Below, in pieces: positions 9,974 to 63,741 of a stretch of 64,000 nt of DNA (within the stretch, counting starts at the first letter, position 1; every line of letters starts with the position of its first letter). Source of the DNA: Tubulanus polymorphus (lineage: Eukaryota; Animalia; Nemertea); assembly GCF_964204645.1 (NCBI RefSeq), contig NC_134031.1, forward strand, positions 18,235,910 to 18,299,909. Reading direction: 5' to 3'. The position numbers were made by a program, and so were the translations under genes. The notes beneath the pieces are model-generated. The model had not been told where the DNA came from. It worked only from the letters and a program-made list of their open reading frames with translations, and made no database searches.

Positions 9974-9999
9974 GGCGATCAACTCGTGAAGTTTACATC

Positions 10000-42900: not shown

Positions 42901-45900
42901 GCGGAAGATAACGGGGAGTATATCTGTACAGCAGTGAACAGAAACGGACGAAATGAGGGCATTGTTTCATTGAATGTACTCGGTACGTCTGACTTAGGGC
43001 CTGCTCAAACCTGCTGATGATACCCTTAGTGGGCGCTCAGTGGGGTTGAGGGGAACCTGTTATCAATTCCTGAGTGAAGCTCTGTAGGTTGAGAGGATAA
43101 GAAACCTCAAAACTGCCCAGTGGGTTGAGAGATAAAAAGATATTCATAATTGCAAGTGCGAAGCCATATTAGTCACCAAAATTGTAAAATTTCAGAGTAC
43201 ATTGTGATAATTTCCAGGTGCTTGAATGGCATTTGACAGATTTTAAAATCTTGAGCAGCAAACTGCTGCTGCGGCTGCTGCTCAATTCAACACTTGTTCA
43301 AATTGGAAGGATGATAGATTGCTTAGATTATAATCTATTTTCTCTTTTCATCTGTCTTGTAGTAAGTCAAGGTATAATTGTGAGAGTTGAAGAACCAAAG
43401 TTTTTGACGGTTGATGAAGGAACAACGGTTAGATTTGTGTGCAGTGGTAACAGTCAGGTGAATGTAAGTAAACCCAGTCCCTCTCCTTCTCTTCATATAT
43501 ATCACCAATCAGCCTTTTAATGTTGACTGATGGTAGAAATATACAAAACTGTGATTTTTATAGTGTTTGCTGAGATCAACTATTCCTAGTGGTCCCGATT
43601 AATTTCATACAAGCTTTTGTAGTATCAAAATCAAAAGCTGGCAGGTTTTGATTGAATGTATGATTACGAACTAGTGAAACATGTCCATAAGCTAATTATA
43701 GACTCTTAATTGATATAGAATTGACTTGGCTTTACTATAATCTAGTGACCTTTACGCGCAAACTATCTTTGAAAATATCACGAATTTTTTCTAAAACGAA
43801 TGTCATATTCTACAGCTGCTGAGTAGATCCCTGTATTTGCTGCATGCTCTATAGAAATTGTCCGTAACTTCCTGTTGTGCACAAAATGAAGTTGTCTACG
43901 TCTCGCTAGTGAACAAAACTGCTTTCACATTTCAGCTAATATTCTGACAATGATTCCTAGGGGTATAACATACAAAAATCATTGCTAAAATGATTGAATG
44001 TAATTTGAAATACGTTTTTTTTTGCACTGACTTCTCTTTTTTCAGATCACACGCTTTTCCTCCCTTAGTGTTGTACGCGCGCTGTATGTATAAGATATAG
44101 AAAAACATGAGTAAATGTACAATGTACATAAATAAAATGTACAATGTACATAAATATGTATACCGGTAAATGTACATAAATATGTATACCGGTACATGTA
44201 TATATGTCTAAATCGATGCACGTTCCTGATACGGGACCCACTTTTTCAATGTTCATCAATATTAGTAGCATGTTGTTGAAATTCTACCAATCCTCATCAG
44301 GACTCAGTGGTTCCACGGTTCTCGGGTTTTGTGTTTGACCCTAGAGTTAAACATCGTTTTCAATGTTTTAACCATAGAGTCAAATCTCAACTGAAAGAAC
44401 TATGAATCTGGGTCCAGTGTTGTTGTGGCATGTTACTCACTAATTCCGCTTTTAGTCTGTTTAAATCATTCAAAAGTCTCATCAATTCACGTATATAGAT
44501 CATAAAGTGCCTCTATTCAGCTAATGAAAACTGGCCATCAACAAATTCTAATATATTATATAATATTCATTCACCCATCATGATATTTTATTTTCTTGTT
44601 TTTGCCGCTCGTAAGGGTAATATTTAAGGTGAGACCCTTGTTATCGATATGTGAAAATATTTCAAGGTTTCTTACCAGTTTAAGGTGGGTTTTAGTTACC
44701 AGGACTGAGTTCCACAGGTTCTCTGGTTAAATCTGACTGTGTTTAGTTTTACCGAGTCAAATTACGGTTCATTTGCAATTATTAACTTGAGAGTCATAAT
44801 GTCTGCTGTGGAACTGGGTACTTGTTTTTTGTCTGATCGAAAAGTCCAGTAGGTTAACATAAGCCCATCTTAAAATTCTTTGATAATTTTAATCATTTAT
44901 ATTTTCTTTACTGTGTTCTTTAAATTTTAACATATTTTGTCGTCGGTGGTTAAATATATATATTCTATTTTGTTTTAGTTAATCTATTCCTAAAAGTATT
45001 TAATTGCATTAGTGTTTATCACTGGTGTAATGGTATAACGTGTTTGATGTATGCTGTGCATGTAATTCATCCATTTCCTTTCAAGAATCCTGTATTTTTG
45101 TATCTGACATATCAATATTTTCCTCGAATATTTTACCAAATCATATGAAATGTATGTTCTTATATTTCGTATAAGCGTTCATTTAAAACTACAAATCATC
45201 TTATGGTTTAGGTTCAATTTTTGGTACAATACACACGTAACACACCCCTATGAGTTCTGGATTCAGTTCCTCAGTTCATAATTAAGATTTGTATTTAGTA
45301 TTAAAACATCGGAAGTTAACTTGAAAATTCAACTTTCATCGTTGAACTGTGGAACTGGATTGAGAACCATCTGTTCTATTCCATTTTGTTTATCGTTTCG
45401 GATTTAAATCTCTAAAAATTTGGATAAGTTGAAATTGTTTTCTGAGTTTTCTCGGACAAATATTTGACTGATAAACGACCAATTGGTTTGTAGATATCGT
45501 ACACATTAGTCTGGACAAAACAAGGAGGAGATATGCCTGAGAAAGGGATGGATCAAAATGGCGTTTTAACAATACCCAACGTACAACAAGGAGATGCTGG
45601 AACGTACGTGTGTACGGGATCTAATCCTCACAGTATAGATACGGATATTGCTACTCTGAACGTTGGAGGTAAATTACAATTACTCAAAATTCATTTGAAA
45701 TTTCATTGAAATGTCTGCTAGAAATGGTGCATGCCTTATTCTGAAATTGGTAAGAGTAATTTGATGTTGAATAAGTTCAAATCATCCCACAAATTTGGAA
45801 TTGGCCCTTAAAGAATAAAAAAAAATCAGTGTATTTTGAATTCAAACTCGTAACTGATTTCATTGTTTTTCTATATTCTAGTAACTAAGGAACCACCGAC

Positions 45901-48900
45901 GGTGCGAATCGAACCCCATTATCAAACAGTAAAGATCGGCGAGCGAGTTGAATTCCGTTGTATCGCGATGGGTCGACCTGAACCGACGTTAGAATGGTCT
46001 CGAACGTCCGGGCAGTTGAATCCTGAAGCGACGTTCGTCAGCGGTGTTTTCATCATTCCGTCTGCTCGTAAAGAGGATCAATCCGAATACACGTGTCGCG
46101 CGTCGAATACAGCAGGAGATCAGTCGATTAGAACTATACTATACGTTACTGGAGGTAGATCAAATCCAAAACAAGCTTAACTCTTTTAGTGCTCACTAAT
46201 CAATCCCTAATGTGCTGGAGATAACTTGAAAATCTCTTTAAAAATTCCATCCCAGTGGTGTTGAATAATGAGCATACCGCTATGATGCCAGTCGTTAGTT
46301 ACTGATCCAAACGGACGTACCTGATAAAAGTGAAATCTTGGAAAAAGTTGTAAGAATGGAACCAAAATGTGAAATTTAGATTGTTCCATTGACTGGATGA
46401 TGGGTTCCTGGGTCCAGATATTGAAGTGGGAAAATTGAATTGATATGATGCAGAATATATTGGAGATATGACAGATTTTGAGTGATATTTTTAATCTATT
46501 CTCTAGATGAATCTATAGCAGTGATAGAAGTTCCGGATGTAACAGTTTCAGTCGGTGCTGATATCAGAATGAAGTGTATTTCTAGAGCCAATATACCTGG
46601 TCGTATTTCATGGACCCGAATTGGTGGACAGCTTCCCCCTGGTAACTATAACTATCCCTTCGCTTTTTTACCCGGCCAGCATCTCACAGTTCTGCTTTCA
46701 GAACTAGATCTGTTTATGAGCAAAAGCAGCAGTTGATGATATAACAGTTTATTCTGACTGTTTCATCAAAGAAATGAAAATGAGTATTCATTTACTCTGA
46801 TATACTGAGATTAATATCAGCCTACCGATCAGATTTGCTATAAAATTTGCTATAGTTGTTTAATTTTTTGTATGGTTCACAATTCGTAGGTTCTCGAGTA
46901 GACAATGGATTATTGATGATACCGAGAGCTCAGTTATCATACAGCGGACGTTACGAGTGTAGAGTGAGTACAGCGACAGGGAGTGGTACAGCAGTCGGTA
47001 CTATTGTCGTTAGAGGAGGACCAGTCAGTAAGTCTCTCCATCTCTCCCTGTCCTAACTCTTTCAGTGCTGATGATTAATACCCTAAAGTGCTGGAGATAA
47101 TTTGAAAATTTATTGACAGGTTCATTGCTATAGCGCATCTACACCGCGGTGCGGTGTATCGTTAGTTACTAATGTTGAACTGTGTTTGAGAGGTGCTCCA
47201 TCTTTCATTAAAGATAGAAACTAATTACATCAATACACCGTGGCAAAGTCCATCATCGATTTATACACCGGTGGAGATGCACTGAAAGGGTTAACCTCTG
47301 AACAACCAGATAATACCTATCTTTTTAGAGGTTAGATAGTTATTTCTTTCTCTCATTCTCTCTCTCTCTCTCTCTCTCTTGTTTAGATAAACGTCCGACT
47401 GTGAAAGTTGAGCCTGAAACCGCCAGGATTCCGTTGGGAGGAACTGGCATTTTGAAATGCGTCGCTACCGGTAACCCGAGCCCCGCTCTCACGTGGAGAT
47501 GGTCGGGCGGTGACTTCACAAATAATCACCGGGTATGAACATCAGTTTAACCTGCAGCTGTAGTTCCTCAATAAGATGGTTCAAAGTTAACCACTGGATA
47601 ACGTAGCAATTGGATATTTCACATATGTCAGTTATCAATAGGTTAATTTTAATCACATTTAGAACAATCGCGGCTCCTGAATTGCTCCATTTGTCCGACA
47701 TAATCTTTAAACTGTTTGAAATATTTGAATAACATCAGATTGAAGGCGATCGATGGGAGAGTACTCTGACAGTTCAATACGGCACGCGTCAGGATGAAGG
47801 AATTTATACATGTATCGCTAAGAACAGTGAAGGAACGGCAACCGATTCCTCTCAAATTGTTGTCGGTACGAACATTATTTCATTCATACTCACATTCTGT
47901 GAAATTGACCCTCTGACCATTCAGATTTCTCTGGGATTCCCATGACATAAGGCTTGTAAAAGCCTTCAAAATTCTTGAAATCCTTCATTTCAAAGACTTC
48001 CAAAGGTGTATGCCTGATTTCAAGTGATAAGTTCTGAATGATTTGTCGTATATTCAATGGAATTTGTCTTCATTTGTTTCAGCTGCAGAAGAACCACAGA
48101 TTACTATCTACCCTGAAAGTACGCAGGTTGTAACTGAAGGTCGAAGCGTTATGTTCCAATGTCGAGTCACTGCTGGCATCCCTCCTCCTAAATTGGAATG
48201 GAGAAGGTATGAAAACCAAAACCCGATAATTAACAACTTGACTCAGTTCTCTTGTTGAGATACGTTTCATTCTAAAAGTTCTTTGGAAATTGTTTCATAA
48301 ATGTGCGTTAAAACTTGAATCCACAATGACAGACAATTTACTGTAAAAATCAATTCATTGTTATAAGGGTGAATGGAGGTGTTTTCACGGAAAATACACG
48401 TATTTTGGAAAATGGAATTTTAAGAATGGATCGAGTGACGTCTGCTGAACAAGGTTCTTACATCTGCTCCGCAAGTAACAAGGTCGGAACTACGACCGCT
48501 ACTGCTGTACTGAAAGTTCAAGGTAAAAACAACTTGTACCTCAGCTCTACAATTCTGAGTTAACCCTTTGCCATGTTCATTGATTATTTTCATTCATATC
48601 TTTTTATTAAAAAAGCGTTTGGAAACAGCAAAGTCGCGTTTGGAAACAACAAAGTCCTGGGATTTTGAAATAGTTCTTGGTTAAATTTTACTCGTAATCA
48701 GTTCATTTTCAATTACGTTACCATTGTTGACTAATTGAGTCAAATTTTAAGTCTATGGCTTGTAACTGGGGCTGGTTCTGAAATTATTTGTACATCAGGA
48801 CTATTACAATGGTTTTACACAAAATTTAACTAGAGGCTATTAGGAATGGAAAAATATCCAAAATTATTAGGCAACCATTACAAGTATTGTTGCTACCTGC

Positions 48901-51900
48901 TTTGTAACACAACTCTTTGAAATACCCAAGTCAACAGTTTTCTATCAAAGTTTTGAAATAAAAGCTTTTGATTTCAGTTCCACCTACAGTACGCGTGACC
49001 CCGAACAGCCCGATTAGAGCTCGCATTGGTGAGACTGTGACCTTGAATTGTATCGGTGAAGGTCAACCTGCCCCAACGGTTTACTGGCAGAGATTGGGTC
49101 AACGTATACAGTTTACCCCTACAGCCGCTCGGGGTGGTGAAGAAGATGAGCGAATAGCTCGAGCCCAACATGTTCTCAAAAATATCTCACCGGAAAGTGC
49201 TGGAATTTATAGTTGTATGGCGCAGAATCCGGCCGGACGGGTTGAGGAACGAGTACAAGTTATAGGTAGAATATTTACACAAAGCTATAAGTGGAGCCCA
49301 TGTCCCGCTTCAGTAGTTGTGAGTTTAAACTCCAATGATTCTTGGTTAGATTTGGCTCCAGAGTTAAGTTTGTTCATTTTCAATGAATTAATGAGTTAAC
49401 TCAAAACTGAAAATCTGTGAAATTGGGTCATGAGTTCTAGCTTGCGTCAAAGTTATCTGTAACAAAAAAGCCTTTACCCGAGCTAACTCGCAACAACCTA
49501 ACATTAACTGAATAATTGTAAGATGTTACCAGTTTGTTTATCAAGGGCGAAAGTCTGAACTGATAAGCATGGTAACAGAAAATCTTCCCTCGGCTTGGAT
49601 CCTGATAACCTTCAGTAGTATTTGATTGTTTTAATTTGATTATTTCAGTTGAGCCAGGTGTAGGATTGACTATTTATCCTCCTAGAATTGAAGCACGTGC
49701 GGCTGAAGACATACAGTTCCAGTGTCGATCTACAGGTACTTATAGTAAAACTTGTCATCCTCTTCTCAGAATCCTGACAATCGCTGATTGGTCTCATTTA
49801 CCAAGCGAATAATAATTATTTGAATGTGTTTTCTAATTAAAGGATCTCCACCGCCTGCTGTGAGATGGAGTCGGAAACGTGGAATTTTACCGATCAGTCA
49901 TCGAACGGAGAATGGTATTTTACATTTATTCCAAGTATCCCCCGATGATGCCGGCATGTACGTCTGCTCGACCAGACGACCGGATGGGTCCCTGGTAACT
50001 GAGGAGGCTGAACTCATTGTTAGAGGTAAATGAATTTGAATTGCAGCTCTCTGCTTATAGGATTCAGTGACCTATATTTTTTGGGTCAAAATTTGTTTCG
50101 AATGATTCTAACTATTGGAATGAGCCTTGATGTTCATTTCTGAACATAAATTCCTTGCCTGAATGTAAAATCTATAGTTATGAGGATTTTGAGGATTCCA
50201 TAGTTCATGTTTTGTCTGTATCCCTATCGTATATCATGTCTCAAATTTATGTCATCGCTTTTTATGTTCTGATTTGTTCGTTGACTGTTTATGACATTCG
50301 CTGCCGGCTTAATAATACACCCTCAATTGCCTCTACATATATACTCTTGGGTTGGCACTGGCGCTATTACATAGTCAGCCTTTGCTCGAAATTGACCAAT
50401 GAGCATTGAGAATGAAGCAGAATTTGTTCACATTACCAGCCGATCAGGAACTGTGTCATTCCCGTGTGCCATAGTGCAAATATCTAACTATAAATAACCG
50501 GATGGTCAAGTCTATTCGTAGCCGGCAGCAAATGTGTTAAAGCACCATGTGATCCCTCACGCACTCTCACACTGTATATATGTACTGCTTTAACTAGGAC
50601 CACCCACTATTTATATACCACAACCTCGTGTTGAAATAGACGTCGGCAATCCTCTAAGATTGATCTGCGAAATCACGGCTAGCCCGCCGTTCCGAGTGAT
50701 TTGGCGTAAAGACGGCGGAGGGATACCATCGTACGCGGTAGCGAGAGAAGGGGTTTTACATATTCCTCGTTCTCGAGTCGGTGATTCCGGTCGATATACG
50801 TGTACGGTACAGAGTCACTACGGGTCAGCAGACGGAGCTATAGACGTTACTGTTATAGGTAAGAAATAGATAGTTGCTGACTTGAAGAAGAAACCACAAT
50901 TACCTGGCATGAAGAAAAACTTAAGAGTATAGTGATGTTTTAGACTCAATTCTGTAAGCCATTTACAAAACTAAGAGAGAAGTGACGCTTTTGACTCAAT
51001 TCTATATACCGTTTACAAAACTAAGAGATTAGTGACCTATTTTCAAATCAGTTTTGAAAATGGGTCACAGAGTAAAATCGTCACTAATTTCTGTTTTACT
51101 CCCTGATTGTGGGTTTTATTACTTCAATTGAATTAGACAGTCACTTGTCTATGGAAACTAAGTTGCAGACTCTATTTGCCTGGAGTTGGAAACAATCTGC
51201 TGTTCTTTGCTTATCACTTGGATACACAATTGTGGAGGTACTAATTTTATAGGCTTGTACGTGTATAAGTAGAAGGCCTGGTTCTACAGTTTAGACTAAA
51301 GAACAATCTAAGCTCATTTTGGTCTGATTCTGATGGAACAAATGCGGACAAATTCTCATTCTGTCTATGAGGGGTCTAATGATTTGAACCATATTTTGTC
51401 AGACTGTGGACTGTGGAACTGGGACCTCATGTGTAAAGTATCTCTAAACTAACCCCACCCCTCTTCTTTGCACTACTCACTCAATGTTATATGTTCTTTC
51501 TCTTGTTGTGTTGTCATTAGATGTGGTTTCACATTCAGCTTCAATATTTCAACTATTATTTCTCCCTATGAAGGTTTTCTGTACTCGTCCATCCACTTGA
51601 ATCCTGATTACCAATATTCTTAAGCTTGATCCAACAACACGATAAACCCAGTTCATCCTGTGTTTCAAACCATGACCTGTTCTGTTGTCAAAACCAGTCA
51701 AGGTCTTCTCGACTCATGAGGTTTAAGCCTGTTTATGAACCTAATTTATGGGCCTAGATTTGTCACAAGAAATTAAAATCTAGGCATTGAATGACTTTTC
51801 AATGTAGATTAGGAACTGAATTGTTAAAGACTTGTTGAGATCCCATGAACTCTGTGTAACCTGCTTTTTTGGATTCAATCTCTTATGGCCCTCTATCTTC

Positions 51901-54900
51901 CTACTGTTTTTCCTTAGAAAAAGACTTGATTGACGTAACAACGATAGAAGTACCGGTAGGTCAGACTGCTCGATTAACCTGCTCCGTACGGGGCAGCGGA
52001 CCCTTTAAAATCACGTGGACTAAGATCGACGGTCAGCTACCAGCTGATGCGATCATAAACGACAGAGTTCTGATTTTGAATAATGTTAAACACGAAGCTA
52101 CTGGTCGATTCATGTGCATCGCCGAGGGGCCGTTCGGAACGGCGAGAGGATTCATTGATTTGATCGTCACAGGTAAGAGGCAGTAAATCTAGGTAAACTC
52201 TTATTGGCGGTTTATGGGTTCCTTATTCTCTTTACTTGCTTTGTCCTCTCTCAAAAATAAATACAACATCCTTTGTAAAATGAAATGATTCCTTGTAGTT
52301 ATTCCCATTCCCAACCCATTCCTCAATGGTGCCCGGTTCTATCTGAATTTATGAGTTGCAAGTATTCTGTTTAAATGACTCTTTCGGGAATAAAGCTGCC
52401 AACTGTCCCTGATTTTCACGGAAGAACCCTGATAATAAACCTGGTCTGTTTATGCTGAGCATGCTGTCTTAAATGGCGTCCCTGAAGCAATTATCTTGAA
52501 TCCCTGAAAAGAAATGTTTATTGCTTGAATTTTCTCTACTGGTCCCTGATTGAAGTTGGCAACTCATTCATTGATCTAGAGTGAATAAACGATATACTTG
52601 TAACTTTCTTTATCTGCTTTATATATTTTATCATGCATCACATCTTCATCTATTACTCTCTCTCTCTCTATCTCTGCGTGACCCGCGCGCTACGTGTAGG
52701 AACGCTTCCTCTACCGACGATCGAGTTCACGCTCGGCGGTACGATCACGCTCGTCTGCGAGCCAAAAGGTCCCGGCGAATTCTCGATCACGTGGGAGAAA
52801 GTCGACGGAACGTTGTCGGAGTTGGCGATCATTCGCGATCGTATTTTGAAAATAACGAACGCCCGAGAACGAGACGCTGGACGATACAAATGTACAGCGG
52901 TGAACGAAGAAGAAACTCAGGAGATATTCATCGAAGTTACGATTAAGAAAAGTAAGACGAAAAATGGCATTATTTCTTCTATTCTCTTCATACTTTATCC
53001 TCAACCAAACCTCAATAATTGTACGGGTGACAGTTTTATAGACTGGTTTCTAGGGTCCATAAACCTGCATTTCTGATTTTGGTCTATACCTCAAGTTTGA
53101 CATCTAGATCCAGTTTCACAATTTTCAGTTAAGTTTTAGTGAGATTGGAAATCAGTTTATTGTCAATGTTTTATTTATGAGCCGAAATCTTAACTCACAG
53201 CTTTGGAACTGGTTCATGTGTATCAGACATACGTGCGGCTATCATATGCTCTCCCTACCAGTGGAATTTGCACTGATAGTGGAAAGTTTTTTTTGAGAAT
53301 TTGGCTTTGTTCCGGGCAGCCAGTATCTTTACATGCTATACAAGGCTCAAGGAATCATGAGGCTAAACTCCATTCCCCTTAAACTAGTCTACAAAACTTG
53401 CCCCTTGAGATCTATGATTATTTGCGATTCCTTTAAACGAACCCCGCCTCATCTTTTCTCTTCATTAAACGCGTTTCCTCTGTAGAACCTCCTCTGATTC
53501 CCGTGCACGAAGTACAAGAAGGTGATAGCGCGCGTTTGACTTGTCGTGTACGAGGCACTGGACCGTTTACAATCACTTGGTTTAAACAGAACGGCCGTTT
53601 ACCGACGAACGCCTTCCCGAGCAATGGAGTGTTGGATATCGACGGAATAAAACCGAGTGATGAAGGCAGATATATTTGTCGCGCTGTTGGACCGCGGGGA
53701 ACTCAAGAAGCGCTCGTAGATGTTAGGGTTTTAAGTAAGAGGCAGATGTTCGAATTATTATGACACCTTTCACAATTCTGTAGATATTTAGAAAATATTT
53801 CTTTTCTTAATGTAAAAAATTATCTATATCCCAATAATTTGATCTTTTGATCCATCGGTAATGGTGCATTTTCCCATAGAATTTTAAAAAATGCAGTAAA
53901 CCTTGGTCGACTTGAAATATTTGGACAAGCAAATTGAGTCTGAGATATAGATGATCTTATGCATCATATTTCTGTACTATGTTAAAGAACAAGTTTTACT
54001 GTATTTTGTATGTAAATATTTCAAATCTATCTCCCATCAATTTATAATCTAAAGACCATTGAACTAATTCTTTTCCCATTCCCTCTTTCCCTCCCACCTG
54101 CATCCCCTCTGTCTTCTATCTTTGATTATTACGTTTCTCAGGAGGTCCAGTAGTTCCCCAGATCGATGTTACATATGGAGGGCGAGCGGTGTTAGTCTGT
54201 AATCCACGTGGCACCGGTCCGTTTACAATAACCTGGCAGCGACTGGACGGCGTAGTCCCATCGTACGCCATCCAGGATCAAAGAAGACTTATATTTAAAA
54301 CGGCTCAAACTGTTGATACAGGCAGATATGTGTGCGTAGCTATCGGACCAGATGGTTCCAGGCAAGATATTTATATAGAATTAACTGTTACGGGTAAGGT
54401 TTGGAATATTTTGATTATTTCTGTTTCAATCTTAGTCGCATGGTTTTTCAAAGTGAAAATCATCAGAATTCTTCCTGCACTAAGTAGTAACGACTAATCA
54501 ATGATGTGATCCCACATTTGAATAATGTGATCCTACATTTTGTTCTACGATAATATTTGTTTGTTTTTATTTTGGTCATATTTTACCATTTGTATTTTTA
54601 GCTCTTATTGAATGAACATATCAATATGCACCTGGATCATTTGTTGCTGTATGATTATGTTCTATTTTCAGGTTCTCCCCCAAAAGTCTCAAAGTATGAT
54701 GTCCAATATGACCAAACTGCTCAACTGACCTGTAATGTCAGAGGACTTGGTTCTTATACGGTGACCTGGCAAAAGGTGGGAGGCAGTTTACCATCTCGCG
54801 CTTTGAGAAGAGACAGAACTTTAGAAATTAGAAATGCTAGAAATGAAGATGAGGGCAGATATCATTGTATAGCTATTGGTGAAAATGGCAGGCGGGTTGA

Positions 54901-57900
54901 TGCCTTTGTTGACCTTGATGTCTTAGGTGAGTTATAGTCATCAAAGATTTCAGAAATTAATTTTCATGATGAAACCAATGACCTTTGATACAAATTATTT
55001 GAATGTTTGATTGGATAAATCTTGTTTTGATAAATCTTCTTTTCACTTTTTCAGGATCAGCACCAACTGTATCCAAATATGATGTTGGATATGATGAAAC
55101 AGCTACATTGACATGTAATGCTCAGGGTCTAACCCGTTATACGGTGACCTGGCAGAAAGTTGGAGGCAGTTTACCATCTCGGGCTTTGAGAAGAGACAGA
55201 ACTTTAGAAATTAGAAACGCTAGAAATGAAGATGAAGGCAGATATCATTGTATAGCTATTGGTGAAGATGGTAGAAGAGCTGATGCCTACGTTGACCTCA
55301 ATGTTATTGGTAGGAAAAGTTCCCGAATTCATGATGCCTTCATTAGAAGTTCTTTGAGTCCACAAACTTGGAAAAATTTCTTCTTTTTCAGGAACAGCAC
55401 CAACTATTTCAAAGTATGATGTCCAATATGATCAAACTGCTACTTTGACCTGTAATGCTCAAGGTCTCACCCGTTACACAGTGACCTGGCAGAAAGTTGG
55501 AGGCAGTTTACCATCTCGTGCTTTGAGGAGAGACAGAACTTTGGTAATTAGAAATGCTAGGAATGAAGATGAGGGCAGATATCATTGTATTGCTATTGGT
55601 GAAGATGGTAGAAGGGCTGATGCATACGTTGACCTCAATGTTATTGGTAAGAGAAGAAGTTCCTTTATTATAATGCGATGCCTTCATAAGATGTGTATGA
55701 GTCCATAAACTTGGAAAAATGTTCACTAACTTTTCCAGGATCAGCACCAACTATTGTGAAATATGATGTCCAATATGACCAAACTGCTACATTGACCTGT
55801 AATGCTCAAGGTCTCACCCGTTATACGGTGACCTGGCAGAAAGTAGGAGGCAGTTTACCATCTCGCGCTTTGAGGAGAGACAGAACTTTAGAAATTAGAA
55901 ATGCTAGAAATGAAGATGAGGGCAGATATCATTGTATAGCTATCAGTGAAGATGGTAGAAGGGCTGATGCATATGTTGACCTCAATGTTATCGGTAAGTT
56001 ATCCTCACTTTCCTGGTAAGGGTAATCTTCATTAAAAGTTCCTTGAGGGCACAGATTTGGAAAAATTTCTCTTTCTTTTTCAGGAACAGCACCAACAATT
56101 TCCAAGTATGATGTCCAATATGATCAAACTGCACTTTTAACTTGTAACGTCCAAGGACTTGGTTCTTATACTGTGACCTGGCAGAAAGTTGGAGGTAGTT
56201 TACCATCTCGCGCTTTGAGGAGAGACAGGACTTTAGAAATTAGAAATGCTAGAAATGAAGATGAAGGCAGATATCATTGTATAGCTATCAGTGAAGATGG
56301 TAGACAAGCTGATGCATACGTTGACCTCGATGTTATCGGTAAGTTATAAACACAAAGGTTATCTGAAATTGATTACCATGATACTGATGACCTATGCAGA
56401 TATTTCTTTAAGTTTTTTTATGCATATTTGGTAAATATTCTTTATCTTTTTCGTTAATATTACTTTCTTTCAGGAACAGCACCAACTATTTCCAAATATG
56501 ATGTCCAATATGATCAAACTGCTACTTTGACCTGTAATGCTCAAGGTCTCACCCGTTACACAGTGACCTGGCAGAAAGTTGGAGGCAGTTTACCATCTCG
56601 CGCTTTGAGAAGAGACAGAACTTTAGAAATTAGAAATGCTAGAAATGAAGATGAAGGCAGATATCATTGTATAGCTATTGGTGAAGATGGTAGAAGGGCT
56701 GACGCATATGTTGACCTCAATGTTATTGGTAAGTTATACTCTCTTAGACTCCTCGTTAGAGTAATCGTTATTAAAAGTACTTTTGAGTCCACAAACTTGG
56801 AAGCATTTCTTCTTTTTTAGGAACAGCACAAACAATTTCTAAGTACGATGTCCAATATGATCAAACTGCTCTTATAACTTGTAATGTCCAAGGACTTGGT
56901 TCTTATACGGTGACCTGGCAGAAAGTTGGAGGCAGTTTACCATCTCGCGCTTTGAGAAGAGACAGAACTTTAGAAATTAGAAATGCTAGAAATGAAGATG
57001 AGGGCAGATATCATTGTATAGCTATTGGTGAAGATGGTAGACGAGCTGACGCATACGTTGACCTCAATGTTATTGGTCAGAATTGTACCATATTTTATGA
57101 GATGATGCCTTCATAAGATGCATTTTGAGTCCATAAACTTAGAAATATTCTTGGAAAAATATTCTCACTTTTTCAGGATCAGCACCAATCATTTCCAAGT
57201 ATGATGTCCAATACGATCAAACAGCAACCTTAACATGTAATGCTCAAGGTCTCACCCGTTATACAGTAACCTGGCAGAAAGTCGGTGGCAGTTTACCATC
57301 CCGTGCTTTGAGGAGAGACAGTACTTTAGAAATTAGAAATTCACGAAATGAAGATGAAGGCAGATATCATTGTATAGCTATTGGTGAAGATGGTAGACGA
57401 GCTGATGCTTATGTTGATCTAAATGTTGTTGGTAAGTTATTTTAAATTTGACTGACGCTAAAGAATTTAATATAAAGTTCTTTGAGTTTTTGATGGAAAT
57501 TTCATTAATATTTCTTTCAGGAACAGCACCAACTATTTCCAAATATGATGTCCAATATGATCAAACTGCTACTTTGAGCTGTAATGCTCAAGGTCTCACC
57601 CGTTATACAGTGACCTGGCAGAAAGTGGGAGGCAGTTTACCATCTCGTGCTTTGAGAAGAGACAGAACTTTAGAAATTAGAAATGCTAGAAATGAAGATG
57701 AAGGCAGATATCATTGTATAGCCATTGGTGAAGATGGTAGACGAGCTGATGCCTACGTTGACCTCAATGTTATTGGTAAGAATTGATCCTTAAATTGTAA
57801 TGTGATGCCTTCATAAGATGTGCTTTGAGTCCATAAACTTGGAAAAAATTTCTTTTCACTCTTTCAGGAACGGCACCAACTATTTCCAAGTATGATGTCC

Positions 57901-60900
57901 AATATGATGAAACTGCTACATTGACATGTAATGCTCAGGGTCTAACCCGTTATACAGTGACCTGGCAGAAAGTGGGAGGCAGTTTACCATCTCGCGCTTT
58001 GAAGAGGGACAGAACTTTAGAAATTAGAAATGCAAGAAATCAAGATGAAGGCAGATATCATTGTATAGCTATTGGTGAAGATGGTAGACGAGCTGATGCT
58101 TATGTTGATCTAAATGTTGTTGGTAAGTTATTTTAAATTTGACTGACACTAAAGAATTTTATATGAAGTTCTTTGAGTTTTTGATGGAAATTTCATTAAT
58201 ATTTCTTTCCTTCAGGAACAGCACCAACTATTTCCAAATATGATGTCCAATATGATCAAACTGCTACTTTGAGCTGTAATGCTCAAGGTCTCACCCGTTA
58301 TACAGTGACCTGGCAGAAAGTTGGAGGCAGTTTACCATCTCGTGCCTTGAGAAGAGACAGAACTTTAGAAATTAGAAATGCTAGAAATGAAGATGAGGGC
58401 AGATATCATTGTATAGCTATTGGTGAAGATGGTAGAAGAGCTGATGCCTACGTTGACCTCAATGTCATTGGTAAGAATTGATCCTTAATTTGTAATGTGA
58501 TGCCTTCATAAGATGTGCTTTGAGTCCATAAACTTGGAAAAAATTTCTTTTTACTCTTTCAGGAACGGCCCCAACTATTTCCAAGTATGATGTCCAATAT
58601 GATGAAACTGCTTCATTGACATGTAATGCTCAGGGTCTAACCCGTTATACAGTGACCTGGCAGAAAGTTGGAGGCAGTTTACCATCTCGCGCTTTGAAGA
58701 GGGACAGAACTTTAGAAATTAGAAATGCAAGAAATCAAGATGAGGGCAGATATCATTGTATAGCTATTGGTGAAGATGGTAGAAGAGCTGATGCATATGT
58801 TGACCTCAATGTTATTGGTAAAAATTGTGCCTTAATTTATGATATGATGTCTTCATAAGATGCGTTTTGAGACATTCAATTTAGGAAAATTCTTGAAAAA
58901 ATCCTCTCACTTTTTCAGGATCAGCTCCAACTATTTCAAAGTATGATGTCCAATATGATCAAACAGCTACTTTGACATGTAATGCTCAAGGTCTCACCCG
59001 TTATACGGTGACCTGGCAGAAAGTAGGAGGCAGTTTACCATCTCGCGCTTTGAGGAGAGACAGAACTTTAGAAATAAGAAATGCAAGAAATGAAGATGAG
59101 GGCAGATATCATTGTATAGCTATTGGTGAAGATGGTAGAAGGGCTGATGCCTACGTTGACCTCAATGTTATTGGTAGGAAAAGTTCCCGAATTCATGATG
59201 CCTTCATTAGAAGTTCTTTGAGTCCACTAACTTGGAAAAATTTCTTCCTTTTCAGGAACAGCACCAACTATTTCAAAGTATGATGTCCAATATGATCAAA
59301 CTGCTACTTTGACCTGTAATGCTCAAGGTCTCACCCGTTACACAGTGACCTGGCAGAAAGTAGGAGGCAGTTTACCATCTCGCGCTTTGAGGAGAGACAG
59401 AACATTAGAAATTAGAAATGCAAGAAATGAAGATGAGGGCAGATATCATTGTATAGCTATTGGTGAAGATGGTAGAAGAGCTGATGCCTACGTTGACCTC
59501 AATGTCATTGGTAAGAATTGATCCTTAATTTGTAATGTGATGCCTTCATAAGATGTGCTTTGAGTCCATAAACTTGGAAAAAATTTCTTCCTTTTCAGGA
59601 ACAGCACCAACTATTTCAAAGTATGATGTCCAATATGATCAAACTGCTACTTTGACCTGTAATGCTCAAGGTCTCACCCGTTACACAGTGACCTGGCAGA
59701 AAGTAGGAGGCAGTTTACCATCTCGCGCTTTGAGGAGAGACAGAACATTAGAAATTAGAAATGCAAGAAATGAAGATGAAGGCAGATATCATTGTATAGC
59801 TATTGGTGAAGATGGTAGAAGGGCTGATGCCTACGTTGACCTCAATGTTATTGGTAGGAAAAGTTCCCGAATTCATGATGCCTTCATTAGAAGTTCTTTG
59901 AGTCCACTAACTTGGAAAAATTTCTTCCTTTTCAGGAACAGCACCAACTATTTCAAAGTATGATGTCCAATATGATCAAACTGCTACTTTGACCTGTAAT
60001 GCTCAAGGTCTCACCCGTTACACAGTGACCTGGCAGAAAGTAGGAGGCAGTTTACCATCTCGTGCTTTGAGGAGAGACAGAACTTTAGAAATTAGAAATG
60101 CAAGAAATGAAGATGAGGGCAGATATCATTGTATTGCTATTGGTGAAGATGGTAGAAGAGCTGATGCATACGTGGACCTCAATGTTATTGGTAAGTTTGA
60201 TGTTTTCTTTTCTAAGTTATTTAACTTTTATCTATCCAAATCAAAAATTTTTCTTATATTCAATAATGTATGCTTGCTGTTATCTACACTTTGTGATGTT
60301 TGAGCTTTTCATGTCAAAAAATGTGGCCCAATATGTTTTTCTGTGTCGTATCTCAGGCTCCGCACCTACAATAACCTCCCTTACGGTTCCGTATGGACAA
60401 ACAGCCGTGCTTACTTGTCAAGTTCGTGGTTCTGGTGCATTTACGGTTAACTGGCTGAAAGTCGGTAGCCGTCTGCCATTAACAGCACAAACAATCGATA
60501 ACAAATTAGAAATCGGTTACGCTCGTAAGGAATATGAAGGTAGATATCAGTGTGTGGCTGTAAATGAGGCTGGTGAAGTACTGAAAGGATTCGTTGATTT
60601 AACTGTCGTCGGTAAGAATTGACTCATTCATTCATCCACTCACATCCCATCTCTTATTTACTTGTGCTTTTTTTATTCTGCATTATTTCCTGCTTTTTGT
60701 TCTCTATAACTTTCTGTGAATGTTTGCTTATGTGTTGCTTGTTTGTCCGTCACAGGCTCCGAGCCTTCCGTATCATCTTATGAAGTTCGTTACGATCAAA
60801 CGGCGACCTTGACTTGCAATGTGCAAGGTCTGACCTCTTACACGGTGACCTGGCAGAAAGTCCGAGGCAGTTTACCATCTCGCGCTTTTAGAAGAGACAG

Positions 60901-63741
60901 AACTTTAGTAATCAGAAATGCTAGAAATGAAGATGAAGGCAGATATCATTGTATAGCTACTGGGTCTGATGGTCAAGTGAATGAGGGATATATTGACCTC
61001 AATGTTGTAGGTTTGTATGGTTAGAAAATTTAAGAGAAGGGAGACCCGACCAATTAACACATCGGCTTCCAGCAGATGATTGCTGTGAGGAGGATATCGC
61101 AAAAATCATTCAAATAGAATACGATTTAACTAAGACTTAGAACTCTTCTTAGAGCTTTTCTAAATCTCAGAATTTGTCTCGGAATTAATGATGATTTTGC
61201 GGTTATCATTTGTTTCAGGTTCACCTCCGACGTTTTCGACGTATGAAGTACAATACGGTCAGACAGCATCGATTACGTGTAAAGTTCCTGGTCTCGAGTT
61301 GTACTCAGTTCGATGGCTGAAAGTCGGCAGTTCGTTACCGCAGAATGCGAACGTACGAGAACGAACGCTGATCATTTCTCAAGCTCGAACGGAAGATGAA
61401 GGTCGTTATCACTGTATAGCGACGACTCCCGACGGGAAGCGCATCGATGCATACGTAGATCTCACTGTTAAAGGTAACATTTCAATCCTCAATTCTCTCC
61501 TCTTGTTTCTATTAACATTTTAAACGTAGCACGTTTCGGGTCGGTTATAAAGTTCAGGATCCGGTTCGATAAACCTACAAAATCGTATCTCGTAGATTTC
61601 TAGATTTCAATGATTTTGATAATGTACAATGTTTCATTCGAAATTCAGAAACAGAACCATGTTCTATCAAATTGGTTAGATTTCAGTTTTTGGCTTTAAT
61701 TTAAGTAAGCCTTCTGAAATTTTAACTCTAAAATGACGAAAACTAAGGAATTTGGTCTTGAAGTTGAATGATTAAAAAATAAACTAATTCAGACTCTTAA
61801 GGCATGAGTTTTATCCTGAACTTAAGAATTGGCTTAATCGGTTGGCGTCCTTAGTAAATGTCTATCCTGTCTTTGTCTTTTAACCTGAGTGTATTTTGTT
61901 GTTTAACCCATTCTCTGTCTATCTGTGTTGTTTTGTTGAAGTCTATTGTGTGTATTTCTGTCTCACTTGTCTCATCGCAATCATCAGGCTCTGCTCCTAC
62001 TATAACCCCATACGAGGTGATTTACGGGCAGACGGCTTCGCTGACTTGTAACATACGTGGAGGATCAGCAGGCACGTACACGTTCACCTGGAAGAGAGTC
62101 GGTAGCCGGTTGCCAGCTACAGCCGTACAACGAGACCAAACTCTATTGATAACTAGCGCTCGTTACAACGATGAGGGAAGGTATCATTGTATCGCGACTC
62201 GACTAGATGGCGAGAAATTTGAGGGTTATGTCGATCTTATCGTTACCGGTAAGAAACTCGAAATATTTACGAGTTACACAGTGCAGCCTTGACATGAACG
62301 AAACCCCTTTCACTGTTAGATATTATACAGTTAGACTCCTACTTACTCGATATCAGTCAACTGCTCAAGTTTTATGTGAATTCTACTAATTTCTATCTAT
62401 TTCCCTCATTCTCGACTTGGTGGAATATTTAGAGCAGTCGACAAGATACTGAATAAGACGGGAGTTTACCATTTACTGGACTCACTTCATATGAATATCT
62501 TAAAGCTCTGGACCCAGTTCCACAGTTCTGTTTTAAGATTTGAATCTCATTGAAAAGGAACTAATTCTAACTCAGAGTTACTCACTACTGTGGAACCGGG
62601 TCCAGTTTCACATTTTTCAAACAAAGATACAAATGTTGAACTGAGTTCCTAGAGAAAGCCAGTCACTGAAATATATTTCGCACAATTTTCAAGATATCGA
62701 ACTTGTTAGAATATATTGATCTATATACATTTAACTGTGTAAACACATCACTGGAACTGCTGCATGTGAATTATCTCTACCCCTGTTAGGCACTCCTGCA
62801 CCTAAAATCTCAACTTACGAAGTCGAGTACGGCCAGACAGCGACAATGATCTGTAGCATCGAAAATGAACGTAAAACTTACACAATACGTTGGCAGAAAG
62901 TTAGTAAAGCTGGGGGCGCGTTACCTCAATACGCGATCAGACGAGATCGGCAGTTAATTATCAGAAACGCTCGAACGGAAGATCAAGGTCGTTATCAATG
63001 TATCGCGATTGATGCAGACGGCAAACAGTTTGAATCGTTTATTGATTTCACTGTAACCGGTGAGTTTAAACTAACCGAACTAACAGTTAGAACTTGGTTT
63101 GATCGGATCTTTGAGTTAAAAGAACGGAAAGAGTTGATAACTGATCACGCTTACTCACTACCTTCCATTCCTTTTATTCCCTTCCTCTTTATGTTATTTC
63201 CTCATCCTCCGCAGGCAGGTATTCAAACCTGATCTCTTGTCTCAGTCATGACTCGAAACCTTGCCTGACTGACCCGAGTGCTCAGGTATATAACATGATT
63301 TCTGATTGGCTAATGATACTATCATTGATGCTAAATCAGGCAGGGATTTGAATCATAAGTCTTAATGTCATTAGTTTCGAATCCGTGCTGAGAGAGGATG
63401 GCTATTCCTTTTCATTTTAAAACTTTTTTCACTTTCATTTCTTGTTTTCTTGTTTTCCTCACATGCACTAAAAGGTTCTGCACCTCCGAGTATTACTAAA
63501 TACGAAGTACAATACGGACAGACGGCCATGTTGACTTGTAAAGTAACTCAGACCGATCCGTCTGCTCGGTTCGCCGTCGTCTGGCAGAAAGTCGGCAGTA
63601 ATTTACCGAATTACGCCGTACAAAAAGACAACGTGCTGGAAATATCTCAAACGCGGCGTGATGATGCCGGTAGATACCGCTGCATCGCTACCAGTCCGGA
63701 TGGGGGACAAATTGATGCATTCGTTGATTTGACTGTCATTG
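12837..63741 (+). CDS. HSPG2: Perlecan / basement-membrane heparan sulfate proteoglycan core protein, multi-exon, 3'-incomplete (domain V not in window)
   Basis: Spliced exons give the diagnostic order: signal peptide, SG GAG sites, SEA, LDLa repeats, Ig (WRLNWGHIP), 3x laminin IV(B)+LE, long Ig array. Exon phases join consistently where checked. Confidence 0.96.
14529..14817. mobile_element. MITE with TIR caggggcggat...atccgcccctg and apparent 5-bp target-site duplication taccc
   Basis: Inverted termini; taccc immediately flanks both ends. Confidence 0.7.
16319..16472 (+). CDS. HSPG2: Perlecan domain I exon with acidic cluster and three Ser-Gly GAG attachment sites
   Basis: cttacag acceptor, [20 protein letters not shown], donor gtaaac at 16473. 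Confidence 0.9.
17025..17476. repeat. 20-bp minisatellite (ccagttccacagttctggag) in a perlecan intron, same family as 465-790
   Basis: About 20 units decaying 3'-ward; inverted terminus tgtaactggatcctga at 17461. Confidence 0.92.
17597..18475 (+). CDS. HSPG2: SEA domain (exons 17597-17762 and 18315-18475)
   Basis: [28 protein letters not shown]...QFK|[13 protein letters not shown]...L..AV..RKIGSY...DGFEFR. The phase 2 junction joins in frame. Confidence 0.88.
18487..18968. repeat. 22-bp G-rich minisatellite (ggtggggcagggagtgtttgat), about 22 copies
   Basis: Tandem units begin about 11 nt after the donor of the second SEA exon. Confidence 0.95.
20112..20392. repeat. 20-bp minisatellite (ctcggtcctggtctacatga), about 14 copies
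   Basis: Tandem units ending about 33 nt before the acceptor at 20426. Confidence 0.93.
20426..20929 (+). CDS. 504-bp symmetric phase-1 exon encoding an unassigned, probably beta-rich 168-aa domain within perlecan
   Basis: tacag acceptor and gtgagt donor, open frame, GC/CpG-rich codon usage like other exons, phases match the flanking perlecan exons. Confidence 0.8.
23483..30848 (+). CDS. HSPG2: Eleven single-exon LDL-receptor class A repeats
   Basis: Exons 23483-23626, 24883-24999, 26644-26766, 27039-27155, 27561-27674, 27833-27955, 28174-28287, 28573-28692, 29284-29403, 29920-30036, 30732-30848. Each has 6 Cys and ends SDE..C, phase 1-1. Confidence 0.93.
26840..26966. repeat. About 40-bp tandem repeat (3 copies) containing the aactgtggarctgga motif
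   Basis: gatcctggtattcag..aactgt.ga.ctgga repeated. Confidence 0.8.
27208..27491. mobile_element. Non-autonomous DNA transposon family C (TIR cagggtggccac...gtggccaccctg); relatives at 15169-15270, 35313-35550, 38460-38705, 42394-42610
   Basis: Inverted termini and shared internal ctggaaaa / tcagggaa / gtgattcaatgaaa / tttaaacc.agaaatt blocks. Confidence 0.7.
30090..30350. repeat. Degenerate ~60-bp tandem repeat (about 4 copies)
   Basis: tgtaca...tgtgt.tgtatttc...ttaac..ta..tagaa recurring every ~60 nt, alternating as a ~120-bp dimer. Confidence 0.7.
31227..33133 (+). CDS. HSPG2: Ig domain, three LDLa repeats, Ig domain (domain II)
   Basis: Ig 31227-31493; LDLa 31642-31785, 31908-32027, 32272-32406; Ig 32846-33133 containing the perlecan motif [21 protein letters not shown]. 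Confidence 0.93.
33422..42336 (+). CDS. HSPG2: Domain III: three laminin IV (type B) domains interleaved with laminin-EGF repeats (about 24 exons)
   Basis: CLRCFCFG; [21 protein letters not shown] (33899-34652); [21 protein letters not shown] (36701-37391); [21 protein letters not shown] (40304-40712); VExCxCPxGYTGxSCE motifs; LE exons with C.CNGHS..CDP.TG.C. Confidence 0.94.
36435..36645. repeat. About 40-bp minisatellite (ctaatgataccctgagtggagttcagtgagttgaggggaac); a related copy at ~43010-43075
   Basis: About five tandem units plus a dispersed relative. Confidence 0.85.
42707..50025 (+). CDS. HSPG2: Domain IV Ig modules 1-8 (several split by internal introns)
   Basis: Approximate exons 42707-42982; 43363-43457+45494-45668; 45882-46154; 46507-46641+46890-47027; 47387-47532+47739-47865; 48083-48206+48368-48522; ~48978-49266; 49649-49735+49843-50025. 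I-set C...W...D.G.Y.C pattern. Confidence 0.88.
44046..44136 (+). CDS. Candidate alternative terminal (or poison) exon [15 protein letters not shown] with poly(A) signal
   Basis: Branch-like actgac + pyrimidine tract + cag; phase 0 matches donor 43458; TAA 44091-44093; AATAAA 44131. Confidence 0.45.
47053..47294. mobile_element. piggyBac-like MITE (TTAA-CCCTTTCAGTG termini); 5' fragments at 33193-33345 and 46177-46305
   Basis: ctaa-ctctttcagtgc ... gcactgaaaggg-ttaa; shared internal gtgctggagata.tttgaaaa and tcgttagttact. Confidence 0.7.
50598..54393 (+). CDS. HSPG2: Domain IV single-exon Ig modules 9-13 (divergent 5' flank of the expansion)
   Basis: Exons 50598-50858, 51918-52172, 52700-52951, 53486-53734, 54142-54393. 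Most share G.GPF.ITW.K..G.LP...D.GRY.C.A. Confidence 0.9.
54672..60190 (+). CDS. HSPG2: Array of 16 near-identical 255-bp Ig cassette exons
   Basis: Starts 54672, 55055, 55392, 55739, 56084, 56474, 56821, 57177, 57521, 57868, 58216, 58563, 58919, 59256, 59599, 59936. Each is 255 nt, phase 1-1, AG/GT bounded; introns are 82-135 nt. Confidence 0.93.
60357..63741 (+). CDS. HSPG2: Six more divergent single-exon Ig modules (3' flank of the expansion)
   Basis: Exons 60357-60611, 60756-61010, 61219-61473, 61988-62248, 62790-63059, 63475-63741. Same Y.V.YGQTA.LTC...W.KVG..LP...EGRY.C.A family. Confidence 0.9.
62508..62605. mobile_element. MITE-like family A exemplar (TIR ctggacccagttccacagt ... actgtggaaccgggtccag)
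   Basis: 19-bp terminal inverted repeat with one mismatch. Relatives at ~22230-22435, 28980-29110, 29452-29555, 33575-33745, 39940-40050, 44300-44415, 44700-44820, 45257-45362, 49300-49430, 51280-51425, 53105-53214. Confidence 0.75.

What the first reader, a model, noticed from the sequence alone, without database searches (positions are those of the whole stretch)
54672..60190. Homogenised array of 16 near-identical Ig cassette exons: a length-tunable, multivalent perlecan rod
Seen: 16 exons of exactly 255 nt, all phase 1-1 with intact splice sites and no stops, encoding nearly the same 85-aa Ig ([67 protein letters not shown]). Domain IV has at least 35 Ig modules here. Known: human perlecan domain IV has 21, and C. 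elegans unc-52 alternatively splices domain IV Ig exons. Adjacent domains in tandem proteins usually diverge, which is thought to limit misfolding, so this identity is unusual. Inference: copy number (unequal crossing-over) and exon skipping could tune the length or valency of the basement-membrane proteoglycan, like an extracellular molecular ruler.
Basis: partly seen in the sequence, partly recalled or inferred. Interest (0 to 1): 0.85.

Follow-up and report, generated by a model that had tools for sequence, protein, structure and literature searches.

The report
Sixteen near-identical Ig exons in perlecan
A ribbon worm's perlecan gene really does carry 16 tandem copies of one immunoglobulin-domain exon, but selection on the protein (not DNA homogenisation) keeps them alike, and nothing yet shows that the rod's length is "tuned".

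Summary
There are 16 exons of exactly 255 nt at window 54672-60190 (+). All have AG/GT splice sites, phase 1-1 and no stops, and each encodes one I-set Ig module. The gene is the perlecan/HSPG2 orthologue of Tubulanus polymorphus (LDLa, laminin B/EGF, about 48 Ig, 3 LamG).

"Homogenised" is only partly right. The exons average 90% nucleotide identity and 93% amino-acid identity. Silent sites have diverged (dS 0.41, dN 0.04, dN/dS 0.10), about as much as the introns. Copy-private changes are 26 synonymous to 12 nonsynonymous, against a neutral expectation of 1:3.4. So purifying selection on each copy keeps the protein sequence alike.

The array grew by unequal crossing-over. Two-unit blocks are 97.5% identical, one exon is a hybrid, and there is a significant recombination signal.

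The array is not unique in kind. Vertebrate perlecans have a central Ig block with 60-100% identity between neighbours. The invertebrate orthologues profiled (Owenia, Patella, Haliotis, amphioxus, Daphnia, a planthopper, a spider) show 21-42%. The 16-module run was the longest and most uniform Ig run seen.

RefSeq splits the gene inside the array.

The parts
54672..60190 (+). Whole array: 16 Ig exons of 255 nt with 15 introns of 82-135 nt
54672..54926 (+). Array exon 1, the most diverged copy (78-86% nt, 83% aa identity to the commonest form); carries the 'LGS' B-C loop variant shared with exons 5 and 7
55055..55309 (+). Array exon 2
55392..55646 (+). Array exon 3. Most of exon 2, intron 2 and exon 3 (55089-55652) match the e13-I13-e14 and e15-I15-e16 blocks at 95.6-96.3%
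55739..55993 (+). Array exon 4
56084..56338 (+). Array exon 5 ('LGS' variant)
56474..56728 (+). Array exon 6; encodes the commonest peptide and has a zero-length terminal branch in the tree
56821..57075 (+). Array exon 7 ('LGS' variant); 3' splice site TAG, 5' splice site gtcaga
57177..57431 (+). Array exon 8
57521..57775 (+). Array exon 9. The RefSeq model XP_074655737.1 ends here by reading into the intron
57868..58122 (+). Array exon 10, a hybrid: the 5' part resembles exon 12 and the 3' end resembles exon 8, as expected from an unequal crossover two units out of register. Not in any RefSeq CDS
58216..58470 (+). Array exon 11; not in any RefSeq CDS
58563..58817 (+). Array exon 12. XP_074655738.1 starts out of frame inside it
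58919..59173 (+). Array exon 13
59256..59510 (+). Array exon 14 (commonest peptide)
59599..59853 (+). Array exon 15 (commonest peptide)
59936..60190 (+). Array exon 16 (commonest peptide)
57516..58803 (+). Two-unit duplication: 57516-58108 matches 58211-58803 (593 nt, 97.6% identical, offset 695)
58912..60195 (+). Two-unit duplication: 58912-59515 matches 59592-60195 (604 nt, 97.5% identical, offset 680). Introns 13 and 15 are identical
60357..60611 (+). First flanking Ig exon downstream. It is also 255 nt and phase 1-1, but only 49% aa identical to the array
60758..61012 (+). Second flanking Ig exon, 76% aa identical to the array and its closest relative outside it. Identity falls to 61-53% in the four exons after it
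42763..54395 (+). 13 upstream domain-IV Ig modules, several split over two exons; 33-44% aa identical to the array
23371..42300 (+). Rest of the perlecan gene in the window: LDLa modules counted by eye at about 13-14 (one confirmed by Pfam), 2 Ig modules, and laminin B / laminin EGF modules (domains II-III)

Best explanation
This is the central part of domain IV of the perlecan (HSPG2/UNC-52/Trol) orthologue of the nemertean Tubulanus polymorphus. One I-set Ig module, encoded by one symmetric 255-nt exon, was amplified in tandem to 16 copies. The amplification ran through repeated unequal crossing-over in one-unit and two-unit register. Domain IV now holds about 48 Ig modules. The copies are not young clones. 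Silent sites and introns have drifted apart by about 0.25-0.4 substitutions per site, while each copy's amino-acid sequence is held by purifying selection (dN/dS about 0.1). Occasional exchange between copies leaves a mosaic pattern. Shown: the anatomy, the gene's identity, the selection signature and the duplication footprints. Inferred: the exons are translated in transcripts that matter for fitness, most simply by routine inclusion, so they add about 1,360 residues. If each Ig module adds about 4 nm, that is some 60 nm of rod (my estimate). The rod would carry 16 copies of the same surface, a lineage-specific counterpart of the central Ig block of vertebrate perlecan.
For: Anatomy. Ig fold: (perlecan Ig3, 1gl4_B, ranks ninth, TM 0.75). 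Gene identity: LDLa, EGF_laminin, three Laminin_G and EGF; Laminin_B and a weak SEA match; the C-terminal 835 aa hit perlecans of annelids, molluscs, amphioxus, arthropods and vertebrates at about 1e-200 to 1e-287; public names XP_074655737.1/XP_074655738.1 are 'basement membrane-specific heparan sulfate proteoglycan core protein-like [Tubulanus polymorphus]' on a contig of the same length as the window's. Selection: dS 0.41, dN 0.040, ratio 0.10. Third-position diversity is spread along the exon while first and second positions are nearly frozen in the middle. Copy-private changes are 26 synonymous to 12 nonsynonymous against a neutral 1:3.4, p = 3e-9. Intron K 0.26 is about equal to third-position K 0.22-0.25. 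Growth by unequal exchange: 600-nt two-unit blocks at 97.5% identity, hybrid exon 10, PHI-type test with 0 of 5000 permutations reaching the observed value, star-like tree. All 16 exons have canonical splice sites with long pyrimidine tracts. The array sits at a single locus in the genome.
Against: No transcript or read evidence could be obtained, so inclusion of all 16 exons in one mRNA is inferred from selection alone. RefSeq models include only exons 1-9 and 13-16 and break the gene inside the array. That break looks like a problem of aligning RNA to repeated exons, but it could reflect real transcript ends. Purifying selection would also be seen if each exon were included in only some transcripts. 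The rod-extension or multivalency function is an analogy, not a test.
Confidence: 0.65

Rival explanations
1. One reading: a length-tunable rod. Copy number varies between individuals through unequal crossing-over. Regulated skipping of the phase 1-1 cassettes varies the number of Ig modules per tissue, setting the length or valency of perlecan.
For: The array carries the footprints of unequal crossovers, the youngest two-unit blocks differing by only 2.4%. Any subset of exons can be skipped in frame. unc-52 domain-IV exons are alternatively spliced, and the first human and mouse perlecan sequences differed by 7 Ig repeats (PMC6266596, PMC2289301). RefSeq models stop and restart inside the array.
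Against: No population or transcript data were available. Phase 1-1 is shared by nearly all single-exon Ig modules of this gene, so it does not point to regulation. Splice sites are uniformly strong. Most copies are old (dS 0.2-0.6), which fits a largely stable array. Every copy is individually constrained.
Confidence: 0.15
2. Concerted evolution: gene conversion or unequal exchange keeps homogenising the exons, and this, rather than selection on the protein, explains their likeness.
For: A significant recombination signal and 41% of informative site pairs incompatible with one tree. Some introns are more alike than the silent sites of their flanking exons (I13 = I15; I2 vs I13/I15 at K 0.025). 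The tree is star-like.
Against: Homogenisation acts equally on silent and replacement sites, yet dN/dS is 0.10 and copy-private changes are strongly biased towards synonymous ones. Mean silent divergence of exons equals that of introns. Mean exon nucleotide identity is only 90%.
Confidence: 0.12
3. Assembly artefact: a shorter array was inflated by mis-assembly of repeats.
For: Tandem repeats are a classic source of assembly error. The gene models break here.
Against: No two units are identical. The closest two-unit blocks differ at 14-15 positions in about 600 nt, and introns come in several distinct types in a non-periodic order. There are no Ns and no second locus or haplotig. Artefactual copies would be expected to be identical.
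Confidence: 0.03
4. Dscam-type cluster of mutually exclusive exons: only one of the 16 is used per transcript.
For: A tandem array of similar exons, each encoding one Ig module, resembles the Dscam1 exon 9 cluster (my own knowledge).
Against: Four exons encode the same peptide and the rest differ at only a few residues, so choosing among them would give almost no diversity. No docking/selector complementarity of 10 nt or more exists between the flanking introns and the array introns, and no long inverted repeats were found. The exon length is a multiple of 3 and the introns are 82 nt or longer, so nothing enforces exclusivity.
Confidence: 0.02

Closest known systems
Central Ig block of vertebrate perlecan (HSPG2) domain IV
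   Same: Same gene family and same domain. A run of neighbouring Ig modules of one subtype is flanked by diverged modules. Neighbour identity is 59-78% in mouse, 58-80% in orangutan, 71-82% in a turtle and up to 100% in a gharial. Both carry a W-x-K-x-G-G-S-L-P motif. The literature ascribes the human central modules to a later insertion or duplication (PMC4398486, PMC2289301, PMC6266596).
   Different: The origin is independent: the array module is 26-44% identical to every mammalian module, central or outer. There are more copies (16 vs about 7-10), higher identity (mean 93%) and a shorter module (85 vs 96-100 aa period).
C. elegans unc-52 domain-IV cassette exons
   Same: Perlecan orthologue in which some domain-IV Ig exons are in-frame cassettes (PMC6266596, PMC1500816).
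   Different: In unc-52, skipping is shown experimentally and regulated by MEC-8, SMU-1/2 and others. Here no transcript evidence exists.
Trichoplax perl 1/2 domain IV (38-40 Ig modules)
   Same: A perlecan homologue with a much longer domain IV than the human one. It was called the longest known in 2015 (PMC4398486).
   Different: The paper reports no distinct central subtype in Trichoplax. Tubulanus has about 48 modules, 16 of them one subtype.
Other lineage-specific near-identical module runs in perlecans and Ig proteins
   Same: Spider perlecan has a near-identical 39-aa (LDLa-sized) run and amphioxus HSPG2 a 77-aa run. Fish CD22-like and obscurin-like proteins, shark hemicentin-like, Lineus peroxidasin-like and Priapulus unc-89-like proteins have Ig runs at 85-100% neighbour identity.
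   Different: These involve different modules or different genes. None of these runs was as long as 16 modules.
Bacterial 'periscope' proteins (variable-length stalks of identical repeats)
   Same: A rod built of highly similar tandem domains whose number could set reach (PMC8201768).
   Different: In periscope proteins, length variation between strains is documented. Here mean exon DNA identity is 90% and no length variation has been observed.

Membership tests
Perlecan / HSPG2 orthologue | Domain V: three laminin G modules interspersed with EGF modules at the C-terminus | tested here: met
   Laminin_G_1 x3 and EGF x3 in P0001 and in exon pieces downstream of the window
Perlecan / HSPG2 orthologue | Domain IV: long uninterrupted run of Ig modules | tested here: met
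   13 + 16 + 19-20 Ig modules
Perlecan / HSPG2 orthologue | Domain III: laminin B with laminin EGF modules | tested here: met
   Laminin_B at 28.7 bits (cut-off 22.4) at 37212-37445; EGF_laminin at 31.6 bits at 36151-36438
Perlecan / HSPG2 orthologue | Domain II: LDL-receptor class A modules followed by Ig | tested here: met
   Ldl_recept_a at 40.9 bits; about 13-14 LDLa-like Cys patterns at 23.4-32.4 kb and Ig modules at 31.2 and 32.8 kb
Perlecan / HSPG2 orthologue | Domain I: SEA module | tested here: inconclusive
   SEA at 20.4 bits, below the 26.4 cut-off, E 6e-4, on one exon piece at 17584-17763
Perlecan / HSPG2 orthologue | Closest relatives over the non-repeated C-terminal part are perlecans | tested here: met
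   The best listed named hits are nearly all annotated perlecan/HSPG2/trol, E about 1e-200 to 1e-287
Ig I-set domain | Profile match, Cys-Trp-Cys core and beta-sandwich fold | tested here: met
   I-set 46.6 bits, Ig_3 48.4 bits; C20, W32 and C65 invariant; pLDDT 94.6 with 7 strands; PDB Ig matches
Regulated cassette exons (unc-52-like) | Transcripts with and without the exons | not testable with these tools
Regulated cassette exons (unc-52-like) | Symmetric phase, so skipping keeps the frame | tested here: met
   All 16 are phase 1-1 and 255 nt, but so are most Ig exons of the gene
Dscam-type mutually exclusive exon cluster | Docking site complementary to a selector in each variant's intron | tested here: not met
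   No complementarity of 10 nt or more shared by 3 or more array introns
Dscam-type mutually exclusive exon cluster | Variants encode different protein sequences | tested here: not met
   Mean 93% aa identity; 4 exons encode the same peptide
Array homogenised by concerted evolution | Silent sites of the copies are kept alike (exon silent divergence well below intron divergence) | tested here: not met
   Third-position K 0.22-0.25 vs intron K 0.26; dS 0.41
Array homogenised by concerted evolution | Mosaic or recombinant copies | tested here: met
   PHI-type test with 0 of 5000 permutations reaching the observed value; hybrid exon 10
Variable-length repeat protein ('periscope'-like) | Repeat number differs between individuals or strains | not testable with these tools

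The most novel reading that the evidence does not exclude
Selection, not homogenisation, holds 16 adjacent Ig modules to one sequence. Each module would then present the same functional surface, making a multivalent binding rod in the basement membrane. On this reading, the central homogeneous Ig block of perlecan domain IV arose independently in vertebrates and in a nemertean because such a block is repeatedly favoured. The array would also be a natural exception to the rule that neighbouring domains stay dissimilar to avoid misfolding (PMC4660218).
Probability: 0.2. Interest if true: 0.6.

Novelty: new member of a known kind. Interest (0 to 1): 0.4.

Why it matters
The work turns a striking sequence pattern into measured evolutionary quantities. 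It is a long run of 16 adjacent Ig modules whose protein identity (93%) is maintained by purifying selection despite substantial silent divergence. That makes it a convenient natural case for testing the idea that neighbouring domains must differ to avoid misfolding. It also bears on why perlecan repeatedly acquires uniform module blocks: Ig in vertebrates and here, and two differently sized module runs in spiders and amphioxus. On the practical side, the public annotation breaks this gene inside the array and omits three exons.

Tried and rejected
- **Transcript-derived fragments:** a search with one array exon for short protein fragments found nothing.
- **Same Ig in other species:** the array exon against 1.84 billion cluster representatives gave only the two RefSeq models of this same locus above 50% identity. 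The array part of P0002 against the 5.8-billion-protein collection gave nothing above 29% identity. So no orthologous array could be compared. No Lineus (or other nemertean) perlecan was named among the 120 listed hits, which were limited to 1531-4872 aa.
- **Dscam-like docking/selector pairing:** none found.
- **Orthology to the mammalian central block:** rejected, because identity is a uniform 26-44% to all modules.
- **Tree of the copies:** largely unresolved, as expected with recombination.
- **Joined model:** Exons were searched one at a time by reference, and full-length comparisons used public proteins returned by the tools.
Full report
**1. The observation**

Tandem Repeats Finder reports one array of period 347, 14.8 copies, at 55045-60195. 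Reading the sequence and scanning for AG|255 nt|GT units gives exactly 16 exons between 54672 and 60190 on the + strand. All are 255 nt, open in the same frame (phase 1-1) and free of stops. The repeat finder independently reports 16 copies spaced 337-390 nt apart. A seventeenth exon of the same size and phase follows at 60357-60611 but is only 49% identical in protein. Each exon encodes one Ig module:
- Pfam I-set/Ig_3 at E about 1e-12.
- Many Ig hits in the PDB by sequence.
- An AlphaFold model with pLDDT 94.6 and seven strands.
- Structural neighbours that include perlecan Ig3 (1gl4_B, TM 0.75).

**2. The gene and the organism**

The window is G000:C7:18235910-18299909 of a 268-Mb genome. 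Two public proteins match the exons exactly: XP_074655737.1 and XP_074655738.1. Both are named 'basement membrane-specific heparan sulfate proteoglycan core protein-like [Tubulanus polymorphus]' and sit on a contig of the same length, so the animal is a nemertean.

On the + strand the gene has these parts, in order:
- A weak SEA match.
- LDLa modules (one confirmed by Pfam; about 13-14 counted by eye).
- Laminin B and laminin EGF modules.
- A long Ig run from 42.7 kb to about 74.2 kb in window coordinates.
- Three laminin G modules with EGF modules beyond the window's end.

The C-terminal 835 residues find perlecans from annelids, molluscs, amphioxus, arthropods and vertebrates at about 1e-200 to 1e-287. 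This is the perlecan orthologue. Domain IV has 13 modules upstream of the array, 16 in it and 19-20 downstream, about 48 in all. A 2015 paper counted 21 in human and 38-40 in Trichoplax, then called the longest known (PMC4398486).

**3. How alike are the copies, and why**

Exons average 90% nucleotide identity (78-99%) and 93% amino-acid identity. There are 12 distinct peptides, and four exons encode the same one. Introns average about 66% identity.

Nei-Gojobori estimates among the 16 copies are dS 0.41 and dN 0.040, a ratio of 0.10. Third-position diversity is spread along the whole exon (0.10-0.28), while first and second positions are almost frozen in the central 100 nt. Divergence at exon third positions (K 0.22-0.25) equals divergence at aligned intron positions (K 0.26). 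Changes private to one copy are 26 synonymous to 12 nonsynonymous (exon 1 excluded), where neutrality predicts 1:3.4 (p = 3e-9).

The array is therefore not homogenised at the DNA level. Silent sites have drifted, and each copy's protein sequence is kept by purifying selection. That is also the best available evidence that the exons are translated.

**4. How the array grew**

Three kinds of evidence point to unequal crossing-over:
- **Two-unit blocks.** Two stretches of about 600 nt (exon-intron-exon) are 97.5% identical to the next two units: 57516-58108 vs 58211-58803, and 58912-59515 vs 59592-60195. A third relative lies 3.9-4.5 kb away at 55089-55652, at 95.6-96.3%.
- **A hybrid exon.** Exon 10 combines a 5' part like exon 12 with a 3' end like exon 8, the product expected from a crossover two units out of register.
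- **Recombination signal.** 41% of informative site pairs are incompatible with a single tree. In a PHI-type test, 0 of 5000 permutations reached the observed value. The tree of copies is star-like.

Similarity to the array declines stepwise in the flanks. Downstream it runs 76, 61, 57, 56, 53% after the odd 49% of the first flanking exon. Upstream it is 33-44%. The array is the young centre of an older family of modules. All matches in the genome lie in this one locus.

**5. Is it an artefact?**

Probably not. No two units are identical, and the closest long blocks differ at 14-15 positions. The intron types follow a non-periodic order. There are no Ns and no second copy of the locus.

**6. 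Splicing**

All 16 exons have canonical AG and GT with long pyrimidine tracts. Nothing marks them as weaker than their neighbours.

There is no docking/selector complementarity of the Dscam kind. With near-identical peptides, mutually exclusive choice would serve no purpose.

Phase 1-1 allows in-frame skipping, but most Ig exons of this gene share that phase.

The RefSeq models break the gene inside the array. One ends by reading into the intron after exon 9. The other starts out of frame inside exon 12. Exons 10-12 are in no coding sequence. I read this as the usual difficulty of placing RNA reads on repeated exons. It is not evidence for or against skipping.

Exons were analysed one by one.

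**7. How unusual is it?**

Among the 103 of the 121 scanned proteins that are 3,500 aa or longer, the median of the highest neighbour Ig identity is 43%. The nine invertebrate or unnamed orthologues profiled (Owenia, Patella, Haliotis, amphioxus, Daphnia, a planthopper, a spider, one unnamed record and a transcript-derived protein) show 21-42% between neighbours. A tenth, partial record reaches 51%.

Vertebrate perlecans, however, have a central block with 59-78% (mouse), 58-80% (orangutan), 71-82% (turtle) and up to 100% (gharial) identity. This is the block the literature describes as a later insertion or duplication (PMC2289301, PMC4398486, PMC6266596). The Tubulanus module is 26-44% identical to every mammalian module, so the two blocks arose independently.

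Other perlecans carry near-identical runs of other modules: a 39-aa (LDLa-sized) run in a spider and a 77-aa unit in amphioxus. Near-identical Ig runs also occur in unrelated animal proteins.

The kind is therefore known. This case stands out by its number of copies and its uniformity. No protein elsewhere in the public collections carries this particular module.

**8. Function**

The best-supported reading is that the array is a lineage-specific, selectively maintained extension of the perlecan rod, presenting 16 copies of one Ig surface.

The 'tunable ruler' idea remains possible. The array has clearly changed length by unequal exchange in the past, and perlecan Ig exons are alternatively spliced in C. 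elegans (PMC6266596). Nothing observed here requires it, though, and the age of most copies argues for a largely stable structure.

The array does contradict the expectation that neighbouring domains keep their sequences divergent to avoid misfolding (PMC4660218). That makes it a useful test case.

**9. Verdict**

- Identification of the gene as perlecan is right.
- 'Homogenised' is corrected to 'conserved by purifying selection, with past unequal exchange'.
- 'Unusual' is softened.
- 'Length-tunable' is untested.

This is moderately interesting as a new member of a known kind.

Noticed in passing
window 49217-60190 and beyond: RefSeq splits this perlecan gene into at least two models inside the array. 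XP_074655737.1 starts at an internal Met at 49217 and ends by read-through after array exon 9. XP_074655738.1 starts out of frame in exon 12. Array exons 10-12 are in no CDS.
   Followed up: yes
window 9859-11127 (+): A single open frame of 423 codons with a rhodopsin-family 7TM match (7tm_1, 75 bits). It looks like an intronless GPCR gene lying upstream of, or nested in the 5' part of, the perlecan locus.
   Followed up: partly
window 20350-20952 (+): A 201-codon open frame between the SEA-like exons and the LDLa modules has no Pfam match at E <= 0.01. It overlaps the '168-aa non-canonical domain' of another first-stage note.
   Followed up: partly
window 23371-32420 (+): Domain II also looks expanded. 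About 13-14 LDLa-like Cys-rich exons were counted by eye, against 4 LDLa modules in human perlecan. Only one was confirmed by Pfam.
   Followed up: partly
window 4288-5507: A minisatellite-like stretch that is open in all three + frames for about 370-390 codons (repeating 8-residue units). It is probably non-coding tandem DNA.
   Followed up: no
window 581-827 and 16928-17473: Two stretches of a roughly 20-codon repeat, open in several frames. They look like copies of one dispersed repetitive element.
   Followed up: no
window 60357-60611 vs 60758-61012: The exon directly after the array is only 49% identical to it, whereas the next one is 76% identical. The order of similarity is not monotonic, which hints at an old rearrangement or faster divergence of that one module.
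   Followed up: partly
L005 (G000:C7:18319910-18329909), about 25-29 kb beyond the window's end: Two open frames with runs of Gly-Gly-Lys followed by Thr/Ser-rich stretches and a hydrophobic tail. They may be small mucin-like membrane proteins downstream of perlecan.
   Followed up: no
proteins P0186-P0197 (spider) and P0178 (amphioxus): Other perlecans carry their own near-identical module runs: a 39-aa period (LDLa-sized) at residues 300-800 in a spider, and a 77-aa period at residues 600-1300 in amphioxus HSPG2.
   Followed up: partly
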